A DNA stretch of 64,000 bases from Hypanus sabinus. Its lineage: Eukaryota. This document shows, one piece after another, positions 19,719 to 63,821 of this stretch; position 1 is the first letter of the stretch; every line of letters begins with the position of its first letter. The notes below the pieces were generated by a model. It saw nothing but the letters and a program-made list of their open reading frames with translations. It was not told the origin of the DNA and did no database searches. Both the position numbers and the translations under genes were made by a program. The stretch lies in NCBI RefSeq assembly GCF_030144855.1, contig NC_082731.1, positions 25,296,001-25,360,000 of the forward strand, in the 5' to 3' direction.

Positions 19719-19761
19719 ATGAACTTCCTCTTGAGTGCAACGTTCTGCCTCTGCTTTCGCC
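19719..19761 (+). CDS. Leader exon of NAR-TCR V1 (MNFLLSATFCLCFR)
   Basis: ATG + hydrophobic 14 codons + phase-1 donor GTGAGT; splices in frame to the V1 acceptor, giving MNFLLSATFCLCFRLVFSQSV, which resembles IgNAR leaders. Confidence 0.9.
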
Positions 19762-19903
19762 GTGAGTACCGTTTACAGTTTTGCCCAGGTTGCAAGTGAC
19801 AGATAAAACGGAACAATTTGAAAATTCAATAAGTCATAGCATTAGTTGTCTTGGGTGTTTTACATCTAATGACGCTTCGCTTCTCCATACTCTTCATTTC
19901 CAG

Positions 19904-20200
19904 TCGTCTTCAGCCAGTCCGTGATCCAGAGCCCGACAATGGTGACGAAAAATGAATGTCAGTCTCTCAGCATCACATGCAGGTTCCAAAAAAAATGGAG
20001 AAGCGATCAATTTATAACCGGAGAGTTCTTCATTCAGCCGCAGACAGGAACGGGGAGAGAGCTGATCCAAACCGGAGGAAAAATTATTATAACGGAAAAT
20101 AAAGCAGAAATGACAACCACCATGAAAATTATGAATCTTGGAGTTAAGGACAGCGCCACCTATTTCTGTAAAGTTAAATACCGATATGAAACTTACTCTG
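19904..20200 (+). CDS. NARTCRV: NAR-TCR variable segment 1 (IgNAR-like V, no CDR2, extra FR1 Cys)
   Basis: Open exon VFSQSVIQSPTMVTKNECQSLSITC...GGKIIITENK...KDSATYFCK; 47 aa from the Trp-equivalent to the second Cys (59 aa in the neighbouring TCR V), so C'/C'' is deleted; acceptor TTCATTTCCAG. Confidence 0.9.
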
Positions 20201-20239
20201 CACAGAGGTTGGAAAGGGATTCTGGCCGTACTCAAATAC
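20201..20239 (+). other. 23-RSS of NAR V1
   Basis: CACAGAG + 23 nt + CTCAAATAC (non-consensus nonamer). Confidence 0.8.
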
Positions 20240-20548
20240 TCGTTGTAATTTATCCCATCAACAGCTTAAGGCGGGTACTTAATCTTCCGGTAATTGAACG
20301 AAGCACTTCACCAGCGTTCCTTACAGTATCGCATTCAATGGCACAGGATGTTTATTGTTAATACTCGAATTCTTTTTCTCTTTTCTGAATATGCAGGTAT
20401 AATGTCACCTTTCGCATTTTTTTAGCAGCAGTACATGAAATTATTTCCCCACTTAACAATCCCGTACATCAGATGGGACTCTGCTCCGACTGTGTGGAAA
20501 CTGGAATAGCAGTTGGAAAGCTGTTATATTCTGCCCATCCCTGTTCTA

Positions 20549-20619
20549 CATTATTAGCTTGACATGAAACACTGTGGATTTTTGGCACATACACAATAGA
20601 GGATAATGGAACAAAAATT
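20549..20619 (+). other. NARTCRD: NAR-TCR D1 (coding 20577-20591 GATTTTTGGCACATA) with 12/12 RSS
   Basis: Weak nonamer CATTATTAG-12-CACTGTG / D / CACAATA-12-ACAAAAATT; D open in all 3 frames. Confidence 0.85.
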
Positions 20620-20920
20620 TGTGGGCACGATAAAGAATATATTCTAGAGTAGGAAAAAAATATTTTATTTGGGATTACTTTCGCGCTGCAATTCGATGAA
20701 TGCCATTGAACTATTCCACTTTCAGGAATTTTTCTTTGATATTTTCTGCAGTTTAAGGAGTCGACATTCGGAAATGATGATGTGGCATTTTACAATTGTC
20801 CTTTTCTTAGGCTGTTTCACAATAGTCTGTGAAACACTGAATGATATTGTTAATGCTTTAATAGTCTGCCATAGTTTTGTACTGTCCAATAACGGTTGCA
20901 GAATAAAAATAGTTGATGAT

Positions 20921-21014
20921 GATTCTTGTACCAGTGAGAGTGAGAATCGAAGCACGGTGAGTATGGCCACGGGTTATGTAGAAGGAACCGGGTCCAAGGT
21001 CACTGTCACAGCCG
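20921..21014 (+). other. NARTCRJ: NAR-TCR J1 (coding 20960-21014 SMATGYVEGTGSKVTVTA) with 23-RSS and phase-1 donor
   Basis: GATTCTTGT-23-CACGGTG; NAR-type EG-x-G-x-x-V-T-V motif; GTAAGT at 21015. Confidence 0.9.
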
Positions 21015-21091
21015 GTAAGTGTCTCAATTGGCGAAATTAATAAAACATTTTCATCAATGTGCATGCATGGGCATTTTTGCTGAATATATCG

Positions 21092-21125
21092 TTAAATTCA
21101 GATTTAAATTCAGATTAAATTCAGA
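21092..21125 (+). repeat. (TTAAATTCAGA)x3 micro-tandem at the NAR cluster duplication junction
   Basis: Three copies at 21092, 21104 and 21115; the homologous J2 flank (~22495) has a single GTTAAATTGAG. Confidence 0.85.
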
Positions 21126-21142
21126 TTCCTTTCTCTTTTCAC

Positions 21143-21152
21143 GGCTTTCGCC
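21143..21152 (+). pseudogene. Truncated leader remnant of NAR V2 (3' end and donor only, no ATG)
   Basis: GCTTTCGCC|GTGAGTACC matches the end of leader 1; upstream in-frame TAA at 21116-21118 and no ATG after it. Confidence 0.85.
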
Positions 21153-21300
21153 GTGAGTACCGTTTCCAATTTTGCACATTATACGAGTTAAATATAAAAA
21201 TGAACAATTTGGAATTTCATGAATTCAAAGTTGTAGCTGTCTAGCGTGTATTTTTTTTTACATTTAATGCCGCTTCGCTTCTCCATATACTCATTTCCAG

Positions 21301-21597
21301 TCGCCTTCAGCCAGTCCGTGTCCCAGAGCCCGACAGTGGTGACGAAAAATGAATGTCAGTCTCTCACCATCACATGCAGTTTCCACAAACAAACGACATG
21401 CGGTCAATTTATAACCGGACAGTTCTTCAAACAGACGCGGCCAGAAACGGGGAGAGAACCGATCAACACTGGAGGAAGAATTACTACAACGGAAAATGAA
21501 GAAGAAATGACAATTACAAGGACAATTATGAATCTTGAAGTTAAGGACAGTTCCACCTATTCCTGTAAAGTTAAATACCGATATGAACGTTACTTTG
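21301..21597 (+). CDS. NARTCRV: NAR-TCR variable segment 2 (leaderless, intact; FR1 Cys plus CDR1 Cys)
   Basis: Open 297 nt exon AFSQSVSQSPTVVTKNECQSLTITCSFHKQTTCGQ...KDSSTYSCK; acceptor TCATTTCCAG; paralog of V1 at offset 1397. Confidence 0.9.
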
Positions 21598-21636
21598 CAC
21601 AGAGGTTGGAAAGGTATTCTGGCCGTACTCAAATGC
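21598..21636 (+). other. 23-RSS of NAR V2
   Basis: CACAGAG + 23 nt + CTCAAATGC. Confidence 0.8.
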
Positions 21637-21949
21637 TCGCTGTAATGTATCCGAACGACAGCTAAAGGAGGGGACTTAATCTGTCGGTAATTGAACGAAG
21701 CTCTTCCCCTTCGTTCCATACAGTATAGCATATAATGGGACAGGACGTTTACTGTTAATACTCCAGTTCCTTTCTCTTTTCTGAATTTGCAGGTATAAAA
21801 TCACCTTTCACATTTTTCTTTTTTACCAAGAGTAAATGAAATGATTTTCCCTCTTAACAATCCCTTAATTCAGATAGGACACTCCTCCAGCCGCATGGAA
21901 GCTGGAATAGAATTTGGAAACCTGTTATCTCTAGCCCGTACTTGTTCTG

Positions 21950-22019
21950 CGTTTTGAGCTTGTCATGAAACACTGTGGAACGGGGGTTATACACAACAGA
22001 GGATAATCGAACAAAAAAT
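21950..22019 (+). other. NARTCRD: NAR-TCR D2 (coding 21978-21991 GAACGGGGGTTATA) with 12/12 RSS
   Basis: CGTTTTGAG-12-CACTGTG / D / CACAACA-12-ACAAAAAAT; open in 3 frames, encodes no Cys. Confidence 0.85.
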
Positions 22020-22320
22020 TTCCTCCCCGATAAAATAATATATTCTGGTGTCCGGTAAAAATTATATGTTGGATTACTTTGGCGCTGTCATCCGATGAAT
22101 TCCATTGTACTTTTGCACTTTCACGATTTTTTTCTTTGATATTTGCTGCAGTTTATGGAGCCGACATTCGGAAAGTATGATACGGTATTTTTTATTTGAC
22201 GTTTTCTTCGGTAGCTTCACAGTGGTTTCTGAAGCAGCAAACAATGTCGTTAATGTTTTAAAAGTTTGGCTTAGTTGTACACTATCCAATAACGGCTGCA
22301 GAATAGACAGAGTTGAGGAT

Positions 22321-22414
22321 GATTCTTGTACCAGTGAGACTGCGAATCGGAGCACGGTGAGTTCCAAAACTGGCTATCGAGAAGGAACCGGGTCCAGGGT
22401 CACTGTCACAGTCG
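22321..22414 (+). other. NARTCRJ: NAR-TCR J2 (coding 22360-22414 SSKTGYREGTGSRVTVTV) with 23-RSS and phase-1 donor
   Basis: GATTCTTGT-23-CACGGTG; GTATGT at 22415. Confidence 0.9.
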
Positions 22415-23885
22415 GTATGTATCTGAATTGGCGAAATTTATAAAGTATTTTCATCAAATTGCTTGCATGGGCAATGTTGCTGAATATATCAAGTTAAATT
22501 GAGGTTTCGGAGTTGGAAGTTATAAGGTCGGGCTTTTGCAAAATAATGCGTTTATATTGTCAGCCATGAGCACGTATTAGGAAAAGCAGAATTAAAGAGA
22601 AAAAAAACAGCGCATCTGAACCAACGCAGTACAAGCGGAGCAGCAAAGATTCATTCACTTATACAGAGTGGCTATTTGTTTTGTCAGCAGGAGTTATTGG
22701 GAGCAGCAGAAGAAAAGCTAAATTTGGGTCAGCAGTTAGTGCTATCCAGTAAGACGGAGCTTCACAGGGAGGTCATGAGCTGAGTGACTCTGCAGGTCCT
22801 GAGAAACTGCATGTTGGAAGAGTGAGAAAGTATGTCTATCATGTACAAACTCCAGATAAATTTAGTTAGTGAAGACCGCTAGTTGCGAATGAGTCTGACA
22901 GCCACGTGTAAACTGTTATGCAAGCGACATCTAAGAGACTGCAGGAGAACCTTTTAAGATGAGAGGTTATGCAGAAAAAGTAGAACAAGCAGTGTCAGAG
23001 AAATGAAATAAAAACAACACATGATAACTGACGGAACTGTAAGGAAAGCGGAGGATGACCTGGCAGAGGGGAAACATCATAATATTTGCAGATGCTGGAT
23101 ACCCAAGCAAAACACCCAACATGCTAGATCTTCTCCGCAACTAAGGTAGCAGATAGGAATATCCCGATGAAGTAGCTCTGCGCGAAACATCGCCTGTTTT
23201 TCTCTTTTCTATAAATGCTGAGTTCCTTCAGCACTGATGTGTGTTACACCGACAGATTAGGAAGTTTTACCCCTGGGTGTGTGAAATTTAACATTCTGTA
23301 CTCCTTCCACACAAGTCCTTATCCCCAACATGGAATATCATTCATTTCTCTTGGATCCTAATCTGCCAAATCAAAGAGGAAAATATTTGTAGAGTGTGCA
23401 TCAGTCGTTAGAAATAAATATATTTTAATCCTTTTTCTCATTCGTCCTTCCTTTACAAAAACGGCAGAAAGGTAGAACTTTACACAATGTAATAAGATTT
23501 TCCGTCTCACTGGTAAAAGAATCATTCTCAACTCTGTCTTACCAGCAGCAGTTATTGGACTCCATCTCTCGGGGTGCGGGATCTGAGAAATTGTTTCATA
23601 AGGGTTCTATATATTAATTATTACTTCCCGGGAAATTTCACAGTTTCAGCAATTACTTGCAGTAATTCAAAGTCTCCTATTAGTAATATCAATTCTCCTT
23701 CTGCAGCACCTCCCAGTAATGTCCCCACATCAGCAAGTCGCTGGAAGAATTCCCAAAGGCAATAGAAGCATTTTGGAAACATAATGAACTCAGCCTGCCG
23801 GTGTGAACCCTTAAATTATTCCTATATGTGGCGGATCAAGTAATGATTGTCAAGTAATAGTGTTGCCTCCTTTCAATTCCTTTAG

Positions 23886-24191
23886 ATCCATTATCGCTGC
23901 TGTCCAAGAGTCCACGTCTACAGTCTTCTTATTCTAATGAGGTCGTCACCTTAACGTGCGAATATTTCGGGTTTTGTCCATACACGCTACACTGGTACAG
24001 GCAGCTGCAAGCAGAGCCTCCAAAACTTCTGCTCCAGAAACATACCTCTGGAGGTCAGGATCAGAACAATATTGCCGAAGGCCACATCTTCGGTTCTCTC
24101 GATCGTGACAAGAAAATCAGCATGTTAATGATTTCCAAACTACAAGTGAGCGACTCGGCTTTGTATCTATGTGCCCTGAGTCGGAGGGGAG
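23886..24191 (+). CDS. TRDV: Leaderless supporting TCR delta V with non-canonical CDR1 Cys
   Basis: Open exon (D)PLSLLSKSPRLQSSYSNEVVTLTCEYFGFCPYTLHWYRQ...ISKLQVSDSALYLCALSRRG; acceptor TTCCTTTAG in phase 1; no leader exon found between J2 and this V; Cys codon at 23975-23977. Confidence 0.88.
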
Positions 24192-24230
24192 CACAGTGAT
24201 AGACAGGAGGAAGCGGGATGTGCACAAACC
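24192..24230 (+). other. 23-RSS of the supporting V
   Basis: CACAGTG + 23 nt + GCACAAACC. Confidence 0.9.
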
Positions 24231-49177: not shown

Positions 49178-49487
49178 CCCAGATTTCCACCCTTTCTGTC
49201 ACTCAAAACCAGACTTTAGAAAGAAAAGGATCTGGTGAAATGGTGACTGTAAACTGTGCCTACAGTACTACAAGACTCGACTATTACGTGCATTGGTACA
49301 GACAATCAGCACAGAGTAAACTGCAGTTTATTGTGTGGAAACGTTCCTGGAACTCAGAGGAAATGAAAGGACAGTTGTTACAAAAACGATTCTCTGCAGA
49401 TTTCCACAAGGAGACTTCTGTCTCCAGCTTAACTATCTGGGGTCTCCGTATTGAAGACACTGCTGTGTATTATTGCGCCCTGAGCCT
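49178..49487 (+). CDS. Intact TCR alpha/delta V exon, copy A
   Basis: LSVTQ..VNCAYSTTRLDYYVHWYRQ..RFSADF..LTIWGLRIEDTAVYYCALSL; acceptor TTTTCACAG. Confidence 0.93.
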
Positions 49488-63511: not shown

Positions 63512-63821
63512 CCCAGATTTCCACCCTTTCTGTCACTCAAAACCAGACTTTAGAAAGAAAAGGATCTGGTGAAATGGTGACTGTAAACTGTGCCTACAGT
63601 ACTACAAGACTCGACTATCACGTGCATTGGTACAGACAATCAGCACAGAGTAAACTGCAGTTTATTGTGTGGAAACGTTCCTGGAACTCAAAGGAAATGA
63701 AAGGACAGTTGTTACAAAAACGATTCGCTGCAGATCTCCACAAGGCGACATCTGTCTCCAGCTTAACTATCTGGGGTCTCCGTATTGAAGACACTGCTGT
63801 GTATTATTGCGCCCTGAGCCT
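63512..63821 (+). CDS. Intact TCR alpha/delta V exon, copy B
   Basis: 310 nt, 6 substitutions vs copy A, open frame, canonical C/W/YYC. Confidence 0.93.

What the first reader, a model, noticed from the sequence alone, without database searches (positions are those of the whole stretch)
19957..23977. Cysteine relay that fits a daisy chain of inter-domain disulfides
Seen: V1 has only the FR1 extra Cys (19957). V2 has the FR1 Cys (21354) plus a new CDR1 Cys (21399; TGC where V1 has AGC). The supporting V has a CDR1 Cys (23975). D2 and J2 encode no Cys in any frame, so a germline type-II CDR1-CDR3 bond is not provided. Established: NAR-TCR V FR1 Cys is proposed to pair with the supporting V CDR1 Cys. 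Inference: V1(FR1)-V2(CDR1) and V2(FR1)-Vdelta(CDR1) leaves no free thiol, as a three-domain stack would need.
Basis: inference. Interest (0 to 1): 0.8.

Follow-up and report, generated by a model that had tools for sequence, protein, structure and literature searches.

The report
Cysteine relay in tandem NAR-TCR cassette
A ray T-cell-receptor gene unit has a second, leaderless antibody-like V segment between the usual tip V and the supporting V, and its cysteines fit a three-domain stack pinned by two disulfides; the sequence supports this, but nothing yet shows that the protein is made.

Summary
The extra cysteine codons are at 19957 (V1, A-B turn), 21354 (V2, A-B turn), 21399 (V2, CDR1; V1 has AGC there) and 23975 (supporting V-delta, CDR1). 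D2 and the productive J2 frame encode no Cys.

The setting is a germline NAR-TCR cassette of a stingray-type genome. It reads leader, V1-D1-J1, leaderless V2-D2-J2, leaderless V-delta. All splice sites are in phase 1.

Of about 74 public NAR-TCR V domains, none of 47 with a recognisable leader has a CDR1 Cys. The only other V with a Cys at V2's exact CDR1 position is a horn-shark gene model (XP_067869961.1), in which that V also follows a J in frame.

V1 and V2 have both stayed intact despite 14% divergence.

Nothing here shows a J1-to-V2 splice, a three-V protein or any disulfide. The Cys gain alone could be chance (P about 0.16). The "no free thiol" argument is weak, because 24 of 66 public two-domain models have an odd Cys count. 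V2's Cys also aligns with the type II IgNAR CDR1 Cys, and an in-frame ATG (21267) lies just upstream of V2.

The scan's other notes list many canonical single-V cassettes in this genome and no second tandem one. Verdict: plausible and partly supported; confidence in the relay is about 0.4.

The parts
19719..19761 (+). Leader exon of V1 (MNFLLSATFCLCFR), donor GTGAGT, phase 1
   Evidence: The leader closely resembles that of the Mobula hypostoma NAR-TCR model P0108.
19904..20200 (+). NAR-type V1 exon. The extra A-B-turn Cys is at 19957; the canonical Cys are at 19978 and 20167; Ser (AGC 20002) occupies the position where V2 has Cys.
   Evidence: 62% identical to the Mobula NAR-TCR V.
20201..20238 (+). 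V1 recombination signal (heptamer CACAGAG, spacer of about 22-23, nonamer ACTCAAATA)
   Evidence: conserved in V2.
20577..20591 (+). D1, flanked by heptamers CACTGTG and CACAATA; no Cys in the forward frames
20960..21014 (+). J1 (..GYVEGTGSKVTVTA), 23-type RSS upstream, donor GTAAGT in phase 1
   Evidence: Joining J1 to V2 reads in frame as ..VTVTA-V-AFSQSV...
21141..21158 (+). Remnant of the last ~12 nt of the leader exon plus its donor. This is the 5' edge of the duplicated cassette. There is no ATG in frame (stop at 21116).
21267..21300 (+). ATG in the former leader intron that reads in frame through the acceptor into V2 (MPLRFSIYSFPV-AFSQSV..). TATAAAA lies at 21193-21199. This is a caveat to 'leaderless'.
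   Evidence: The matching ATG before V1 is out of frame because of a 1-nt length difference.
21301..21597 (+). NAR-type V2 exon, acceptor TTTCCAG in phase 1. A-B-turn Cys at 21354; canonical Cys at 21375 and 21564; CDR1 Cys at 21399.
   Evidence: The CDR1 Cys aligns with the type II VNAR CDR1 Cys in solved structures. 68% aa identity to V1, with no stop or indel.
21598..21635 (+). V2 recombination signal, same heptamer and nonamer type as V1
21978..21991 (+). D2 (GAACGGGGGTTATA); no Cys codon in any of six frames
22360..22414 (+). J2 (..GYREGTGSRVTVTV), donor GTATGT in phase 1
   Evidence: Joining J2 to V-delta reads in frame as ..VTVTV-D-PLSLL.., the same junction as in Mobula P0108.
23886..24191 (+). 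Leaderless supporting V-delta exon, acceptor TTTAG in phase 1. Canonical Cys at 23957 and 24170; CDR1 Cys at 23975.
   Evidence: 71% identical to the Mobula supporting V. An RNA-type contig of the same species label shows a J end spliced exactly at this acceptor in a 97%-identical copy.
24192..24230 (+). V-delta 23-type recombination signal (CACAGTG .. GCACAAACC)

Best explanation
**What the locus is.** It is a NAR-TCR cassette in which a 1.4-kb duplication, starting inside the leader exon, placed a second NAR-type V-D-J unit between the first unit and the supporting V-delta.

**How a three-V chain could arise.** The second unit (V2) has no leader exon, but it keeps a phase-1 acceptor. When V1-D1-J1 and V2-D2-J2 have both rearranged, default splicing gives leader, V1DJ1, V2DJ2, V-delta-DJ and C-delta. 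That is a delta chain with three V domains.

**Why the cysteines fit.** V2 combines two marks. It has the A-B-turn Cys of a NAR-TCR V, at the membrane-proximal pole of the domain. It also has a CDR1 Cys, at the distal pole, which is the mark of a supporting V. The germline-encoded extra cysteines can therefore pair as V1(Cys19)-V2(Cys34) and V2(Cys19)-V-delta(Cys31).

**What happens if V2 is left out.** V2 can be bypassed by a V1-to-D2/J2 joining or by a J1-to-V-delta splice. The canonical V1(Cys19)-V-delta(Cys31) pair then remains.

**Shown versus inferred.**
- Shown: the codons, phases, signals, intactness and comparative distribution.
- Inferred: inclusion of V2 in transcripts, stacking of the domains, and both disulfides.
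For: 1. **Anatomy.**
- Every junction is in frame, and both cassettes keep their RSSs and splice sites.
- V2 has no in-frame leader exon.
- The duplication begins inside the leader exon.

2. **Both V copies look constrained.**
- They differ at 42 of 294 nt, yet neither has a stop, an indel or a lost structural Cys.
- In the neutral simulation, P(no stop) = 0.17 and P(three Cys kept) = 0.33. P(no indel), from the non-coding gap rate, is 0.056.

3. **The two partner cysteines are strongly conserved.**
- The A-B-turn Cys is present in 73 of 75 NAR-type V domains.
- The supporting-V CDR1 Cys is present in about 76 of 79 domains from about 17 species.
- Both were reported as conserved in PMC1845163.

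4. **A CDR1 Cys is almost never seen in NAR-TCR Vs.**
- It occurs in 0 of 47 leader-bearing domains.
- The only other domain with a Cys at V2's exact position (8 residues after the canonical Cys, with 7 residues between it and the FFxQ motif) is horn-shark XP_067869961.1 (P0001).
- That V follows a J in frame and has no CDR3 Cys as modelled.
- By exact count, P = 0.001 with V2 included, and 0.03-0.05 with V1 and V2 left out.

5. **The Cys is derived in V2.** V1 has Ser there, and the closest outgroup (Mobula P0108) has Tyr.

6. **V2 has no germline CDR3 partner.** D2 and J2 supply no Cys.

7. **Position in solved structures.**
- V2's Cys34 aligns with the exposed CDR1 Cys of type II VNARs.
- Cys19 aligns with the Gly of KETGESL in the A-B turn.
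- Placing these at opposite poles of the domain rests on general V-domain topology, not on a tool result.
Against: - There is no transcript evidence for a J1-to-V2 splice. The only RNA-type contig covers a J-to-V-delta junction of a 97% copy.
- No structural model with distances could be obtained, and the complex prediction gave no verdict.
- A new CDR1 Cys arises by chance in about 16% of neutral simulations.
- Cysteine parity is not a firm rule: 24 of 66 public two-domain models carry an odd total. The extras lie in the modelled CDR3, at N-terminal position 3, or in supporting-V FR2.
- The horn-shark parallel is an automatic gene model. Its DNA could not be fetched, so its V may have a leader of its own.
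- A white-shark model with a J-preceded V (P0040) has no CDR1 Cys.
- An in-frame ATG at 21267 could let V2 start on its own.
- The leader could also splice straight to V2.
Confidence: 0.4

Rival explanations
1. V2 is an alternative tip domain, not a middle domain. It would be expressed as a two-V chain, either by splicing the V1 leader directly to rearranged V2DJ2 or from the in-frame ATG at 21267. Its CDR1 Cys would work as in type II IgNAR, bonding to a CDR3 Cys made at the junction.
For: - V2's Cys34 aligns exactly with the type II VNAR CDR1 Cys in solved structures.
- If V1 stays in germline form, its exon has no donor, so exon definition would favour a leader-to-V2DJ2 splice. This is an inference from the anatomy.
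- An in-frame ATG lies at 21267, with TATAAAA at 21193.
- NAR-TCR CDR3s can hold Cys, in a predicted rearranged chain (P0099) and in many gene models.
Against: - D2 and J2 encode no Cys. Only a minority of junctions would supply a partner, and the rest would carry a free thiol. Type II IgNAR genes encode the partner in their D segments (established knowledge).
- The horn-shark V with the same Cys also has no CDR3 Cys as modelled.
- The putative 15-residue signal peptide is short and only weakly hydrophobic by my own estimate.
- The in-frame ATG could easily be chance.
Confidence: 0.25
2. The CDR1 Cys is a chance substitution in a duplicate that contributes little or nothing. V2 would usually be deleted by V1-to-D2/J2 joining, or skipped by J1-to-V-delta splicing. 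The apparent relay would be coincidence.
For: - A new CDR1 Cys arises in about 16% of neutral simulations.
- Amino-acid divergence between V1 and V2 (31 of 98) matches the neutral expectation of 29, and pN (0.157) exceeds pS (0.09).
- Compatible RSSs allow V1 to join D2 or J2.
- Odd cysteine counts are tolerated in many gene models.
- Decayed NAR-TCR cassettes exist elsewhere in this genome. This comes from an unchecked scan note (s1-187745).
Against: - Keeping the frame, all three structural Cys, the RSS, the acceptor, D2, J2 and its donor across 14-20% divergence is unlikely without selection. The joint probability is roughly 0.003 for the V exon alone.
- The same rare Cys at the same position recurs in a J-preceded V of a distant lineage.
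Confidence: 0.25

Closest known systems
NAR-TCR, the doubly rearranging TCR-delta of cartilaginous fish (Criscitiello, Saltis and Flajnik 2006; elephant shark: Venkatesh et al. 2007, PMC1845163)
   Same: - A leader-bearing NAR-type V with an A-B-loop Cys and no Trp in the WYRQ motif.
- Its own D and J.
- A J donor spliced to a leaderless supporting V-delta with a CDR1 Cys.
- A location among V-alpha/delta segments.
   Different: - A second complete NAR-type V-D-J unit, without a leader exon, sits between the first unit and the supporting V.
- That V carries both the NAR-type Cys and a supporting-V-type CDR1 Cys.
- No paper that I could search describes a three-V form.
Type II IgNAR V domains (CDR1-CDR3 disulfide)
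   Same: V2's CDR1 Cys aligns with the type II CDR1 Cys in solved VNARs 8hgi_C and 9bn7_D.
   Different: - V2 has no germline CDR3 Cys, whereas type II genes encode one in their D segments.
- V2 keeps the A-B-turn Cys that IgNAR V domains lack (P0024).
- V2 lies in a TCR cassette, not an IgNAR cluster.
TCR-mu of marsupials and monotremes
   Same: A TCR chain with an unpaired, antibody-like distal V stacked on a supporting V (PMC3457774).
   Different: - TCR-mu arose independently and uses VH-related Vs.
- It has two V domains, not three.
- The text I read mentions no inter-V cysteine pair.
Horn-shark gene model XP_067869961.1 (P0001)
   Same: - A NAR-type V with both the A-B-turn Cys and a Cys at the identical CDR1 position.
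- It is preceded in frame by a J and followed by a J and a supporting V with a CDR1 Cys.
   Different: - It is an automatic model with repeated, partly truncated V-J units.
- Whether that V has a leader, and whether the joins are transcribed, could not be checked because no DNA was available.

Membership tests
NAR-TCR cassette | NAR-type V with leader, lacking the Trp of the WYRQ motif | tested here: met
   V1 has the leader MNFLLSATFCLCFR and FFIQ in place of WYRQ. V2 has FFKQ but no leader exon. The best PDB matches are VNARs.
NAR-TCR cassette | Extra Cys in the A-B loop of the NAR-type V | tested here: met
   Cys19 is present in both V1 (19957) and V2 (21354). It is present in 73 of 75 public domains.
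NAR-TCR cassette | Own D and J with RSSs, and a J donor in phase with a leaderless supporting V-delta | tested here: met
   The junction reads ..VTVTV-D-PLSL.., as in Mobula P0108.
NAR-TCR cassette | Supporting V-delta without leader and with a CDR1 Cys | tested here: met
   Exon 23886-24191 has the acceptor TTTAG and Cys31 at 23975. The conventional V-alpha/delta segments at 49198 and 63532 lack this Cys.
NAR-TCR cassette | Expressed as a multi-V delta chain | tested here: inconclusive
   One RNA-type contig shows a J end spliced at the supporting-V acceptor in a 97% copy. Nothing covers V1 or V2.
Supporting-V role (applied to V2) | No leader; a phase-matched acceptor behind an upstream J donor | tested here: met
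   Caveat: an in-frame ATG at 21267.
Supporting-V role (applied to V2) | CDR1 Cys | tested here: met
   TGC 21399, 8 residues after the canonical Cys. The supporting V-delta has its CDR1 Cys 6 residues after, in a shorter loop.
Supporting-V role (applied to V2) | TCR-delta-type V able to pair with V-gamma (WYRQ motif) | tested here: not met
   V2 is NAR-type (FFKQ) and only about 21% identical to the supporting V. It could act only as an unpaired middle domain.
Type II IgNAR V | CDR1 Cys with a germline (D-encoded) CDR3 Cys partner | tested here: not met
   The CDR1 Cys aligns, but D2 and J2 encode no Cys.
Inter-domain disulfide relay | Cys pairs within bonding distance, and the bonds observed | not testable with these tools
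   The structure tools return no coordinates. The complex job gave no verdict.

The most novel reading that the evidence does not exclude
Some rays, and convergently horn sharks, make a TCR-delta chain with three rearranging V domains. The middle NAR-type domain has been adapted for this: it gained the CDR1 cysteine of a supporting V and kept its own A-B-turn cysteine. Two germline-encoded disulfides would then pin the stack into a rigid stalk that holds two unpaired binding domains.
Probability: 0.3. Interest if true: 0.85.

Novelty: new variant of a known kind. Interest (0 to 1): 0.6.

Why it matters
NAR-TCR is the textbook case of an antigen receptor chain built from two separate V(D)J rearrangements. 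A third rearranging V domain, with cysteines adapted to lock it in place, would extend the known limits of antigen-receptor architecture. It would also show how a tip domain can be turned into a supporting domain by one deletion (the leader) and one substitution (the CDR1 Cys). And it would give a natural template for rigid tandem single-domain binders.

It also makes the long-standing, untested proposal of an inter-V disulfide in NAR-TCR directly testable. This locus predicts two such bonds and specific Cys-to-Ser phenotypes.

Tried and rejected
- **Transcript evidence.** Two run searches and the single read-laying run gave only DNA-type contigs at 90-95% identity. These are paralogous cassettes. 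There was also one short RNA-type contig on the supporting V. The J1|V2 junction could not be tested.
- **Complex prediction of V1 with V2**: no verdict, with scores of 0.09 and 0.02 and low fold confidence. This is not evidence either way. The germline V exons lack the J-encoded last strand, and the domains are normally tethered.
- **Folding the spliced three-domain chain.** I did not attempt this.
- **Homologue search with V2 alone**: no candidates.
- **Fetching other loci.** DNA for the horn-shark, Mustelus and Mobula loci was unavailable because the files were too large.
- **Literature.**
  - Criscitiello et al. 2006 and Ott et al. 2021 are not held, so the original wording of the disulfide proposal is unchecked.
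  - Two broad searches returned only irrelevant papers.
- **Mustelus P0085 rejected as support.** It has a CDR1 Cys, but at another position. It lies at a contig end, and its supporting V has lost a canonical Cys.
- **Cysteine parity rejected as a strong argument**.


Full report
**1. The observation**

I fixed the exon boundaries by string search and in-frame translation.

| Segment | Coordinates | Notes |
|---|---|---|
| Leader exon | 19719-19761 | MNFLLSATFCLCFR; ends in phase 1 at GTGAGT |
| V1 exon | 19904-20200 | Cys at residues 19 (TGT 19957), 26 (19978) and 89 (20167) |
| V2 exon | 21301-21597 | Cys at 19 (TGT 21354), 26 (21375), 34 (TGC 21399) and 89 (21564) |
| Supporting V-delta exon | 23886-24191 | Cys at 25 (23957), 31 (TGT 23975) and 96 (24170) |

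- V1 has AGC (Ser) at the codon that matches V2's Cys34 (20002-20004).
- D2 (21978-21991) has no Cys codon in any of six frames, and the productive J2 frame has none.
- Every coordinate in the finding is therefore right. The only slip is that J2 has a Cys codon in an unused frame.

**2. The setting**

The stretch is a germline NAR-TCR cassette with one extra unit.
- J1 (20960-21014) ends ..VTVTA with a GTAAGT donor in phase 1.
- V2 begins behind a TTTCCAG acceptor in phase 1.
- J2 (22360-22414) ends ..VTVTV with a GTATGT donor in phase 1.
- The supporting V begins behind a TTTAG acceptor in phase 1.
- The J1-to-V2 and J2-to-V-delta joins both read through in frame.

The two NAR units are duplicates.
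- Aligning the cassettes shows that the copy begins inside the leader exon. Only its last ~12 nt and the donor survive before V2.
- The copy then runs past the J at 78-86% identity, in coding and non-coding parts alike.
- Walking back in frame from the remnant donor reaches a stop at 21116 with no ATG, so V2 has no leader exon.
- V, D and J recombination signals are conserved in both units.

Other context:
- The window holds only this one NAR unit, plus two conventional V-alpha/delta segments at 49198-49485 and 63532-63819. Neither has a CDR1 Cys.
- The closest public relative is a canonical leader-V-J-supporting-V model of Mobula hypostoma. It is 71% identical in the supporting V, and 62% and 59% identical to V1 and V2.
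- Scan notes call this genome a stingray with many canonical cassettes (unchecked).

**3. Is V2 alive?**

- V1 and V2 differ at 42 of 294 nt and 31 of 98 residues. pN is 0.157 and pS is 0.09. The amino-acid sequence has therefore changed as fast as neutral drift, or faster.
- Neither copy has a stop, an indel or a lost structural Cys.
- With 42 random substitutions, only 17% of trials stay stop-free. Of those, 33% keep all three Cys.
- The non-coding gap rate predicts 2.9 indels in 297 nt, so P(none) = 0.056.
- The intact signals, D2, J2 and splice sites point the same way. V2 looks maintained, as expected for a V gene under diversifying but frame-preserving selection.

**4. The cysteines in comparison**

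- PMC1845163 states that NAR-TCR Vs have a leader and a Cys in the a-b loop. It also states that the associated delta Vs lack a leader and share a conserved CDR1 Cys.
- I could not open the 2006 paper that, as I recall, proposes that the two bond. That step rests on memory.
- I collected public gene models with a library-wide HMMER search and two word-indexed searches. I then parsed 75 NAR-type V domains and 79 supporting Vs from about 17 shark, ray and chimaera species.

| Feature | Count |
|---|---|
| A-B-turn Cys in NAR-type V domains | 73 of 75 |
| CDR1 Cys in supporting Vs | about 76 of 79 |
| CDR1 Cys in NAR-TCR Vs with a recognisable leader | 0 of 47 |

- Exactly one other domain has a Cys in V2's alignment column: horn-shark XP_067869961.1 (P0001). 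The spacing is identical: 8 residues after the canonical Cys, with 7 residues between it and the FFxQ motif.
- In that model the V follows a J in frame (..VTITAD|SLSQSV..). It has no Cys in its modelled CDR3. It is followed by a J and a supporting V with the usual CDR1 Cys.
- A white-shark model (P0040) also has a J-preceded V, but without a CDR1 Cys.
- A Mustelus fragment (P0085) has a CDR1 Cys at another position. It sits at a contig end and has a degenerate supporting V.
- Exact counts give P = 0.001 with V2 included. With V1 and V2, which generated the hypothesis, left out, P = 0.03-0.05.
- The Cys is derived in V2: V1 has Ser and Mobula has Tyr at that position.

**5. Geometry, as far as sequence allows**

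- Against solved structures, V2's best matches are shark VNARs. HMMER aligns V2 Cys34 with the CDR1 Cys of type II VNARs (8hgi_C, 9bn7_D). It aligns Cys19 with the Gly of KETGESL in the A-B turn.
- By standard V-domain topology (established knowledge, not a tool result), CDR1 lies at the distal pole, next to the N-terminus. The A-B turn lies at the proximal pole, next to the end of the last strand.
- A domain placed N-terminal to V2 would therefore present its A-B turn to V2's CDR1. This is the same relation as between a NAR V and its supporting V.
- The lengths are similar too. The canonical Cys is residue 26 in V2 and residue 25 in the supporting V. The CDR1 Cys lies 8 and 6 residues beyond it.

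**6. What weakens the reading**

- No transcript data reached V1 or V2. The runs that hold the stretch are DNA-type contigs of paralogous cassettes. The only RNA-type contig shows a J end (GTCACTGTCATAGTC) spliced at the supporting-V acceptor of a 97% copy.
- The Cys gain alone is not improbable (16%).
- 'No free thiol' is not a dependable rule. Of 66 public two-domain models, 30 have the expected six Cys and 24 have seven. The extras lie in the modelled CDR3, at N-terminal position 3 (including the Mobula relative), or in supporting-V FR2. Part of this reflects how gene models read through D and RSS.
- V2's Cys sits exactly where type II IgNAR has the Cys that bonds to CDR3. An intradomain bond to a junction-encoded Cys therefore cannot be excluded.
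- An ATG at 21267 reads in frame through the acceptor into V2 (MPLRFSIYSFPV-AFSQSV..), with TATAAAA at 21193-21199. The matching ATG before V1 is out of frame. This could be a weak unspliced leader.
- If only V2 rearranges, the V1 leader would probably splice straight to V2DJ2. V1 can also join D2 or J2 and delete V2.
- The horn-shark parallel is an automatic model, and I could not inspect its DNA.

**7. Isoforms and their extra cysteines (inference)**

| Isoform | Extra Cys | Outcome |
|---|---|---|
| V1-V-delta (V1 joined to D2/J2, or J1 spliced to V-delta) | two | one pair |
| V1-V2-V-delta | four | two pairs |
| V2-V-delta (leader spliced to V2, or start at ATG 21267) | three | CDR1 Cys left over unless CDR3 supplies a partner |

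Only the isoforms that contain V1 are balanced by germline-encoded residues. This is what one would expect if the CDR1 Cys was fixed for the three-V form.

**8. Verdict**

Expression, stacking and bonding remain inferences.
- My weights are: disulfide relay in a three-V chain 0.4; type II-like use as an alternative tip 0.25; chance in a little-used duplicate 0.25; other 0.1.
- No three-V NAR-TCR appears in the literature I could search.
- If real, it is a new variant of a known kind.

Noticed in passing
window 21193-21300: An ATG at 21267 reads in frame through the V2 acceptor into the V2 exon, with a TATAAAA box at 21193-21199. The matching ATG before V1 is out of frame because of a 1-nt length difference. 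V2 might be able to start on its own.
   Followed up: partly
window 23044-23195 (J2 to supporting-V intron): Contig depth in three DNA-type runs of the same species label jumps 20- to 50-fold here (288, 615 and 1160, against about 5-80 elsewhere). This suggests a high-copy repeat inside the intron.
   Followed up: no
window 19755 joined to 21147 (also 19734 to 21251), run X8: DNA contigs join the V1 leader exon directly to V2-type intron sequence, skipping about 1.4 kb. This is either a paralogous single-V cassette whose V is V2-like, or a haplotype without the duplication. Whether that V carries the CDR1 Cys is unknown.
   Followed up: no
window 23885-24048, run X3: A 184-nt RNA-type contig has a J end (GTCACTGTCATAGTC) spliced exactly at the supporting-V acceptor. 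It is 97% identical to this V-delta, so it comes from a close paralogue or allele that is transcribed.
   Followed up: partly
public proteins P0108, P0083, P0086, P0087, P0078, P0092, P0110; also P0064, P0066, P0072, P0073, P0075: One NAR-TCR V subfamily has an extra Cys at N-terminal position 3 (..FCQSV..). This includes the Mobula relative. Some supporting Vs have a Cys in FR2 (WYCQSP). In all, 24 of 66 two-domain models have an odd Cys count, and the partners of these extras are unknown.
   Followed up: partly
public protein P0001 (XP_067869961.1, Heterodontus francisci; gene span 8.1 kb): The gene model chains a germline J (read through its heptamer), a truncated V-J unit, a full V-J unit whose FR3-to-J part is identical to the truncated one, and a supporting V. 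This suggests a very recent tandem array of V-J units in horn shark, possibly germline-joined.
   Followed up: partly
window 49198-49485 and 63532-63819: Two conventional V-alpha/delta segments on the + strand, 14 kb apart, are near-identical duplicates (about 6 differences in 96 residues). Neither has a CDR1 Cys.
   Followed up: no
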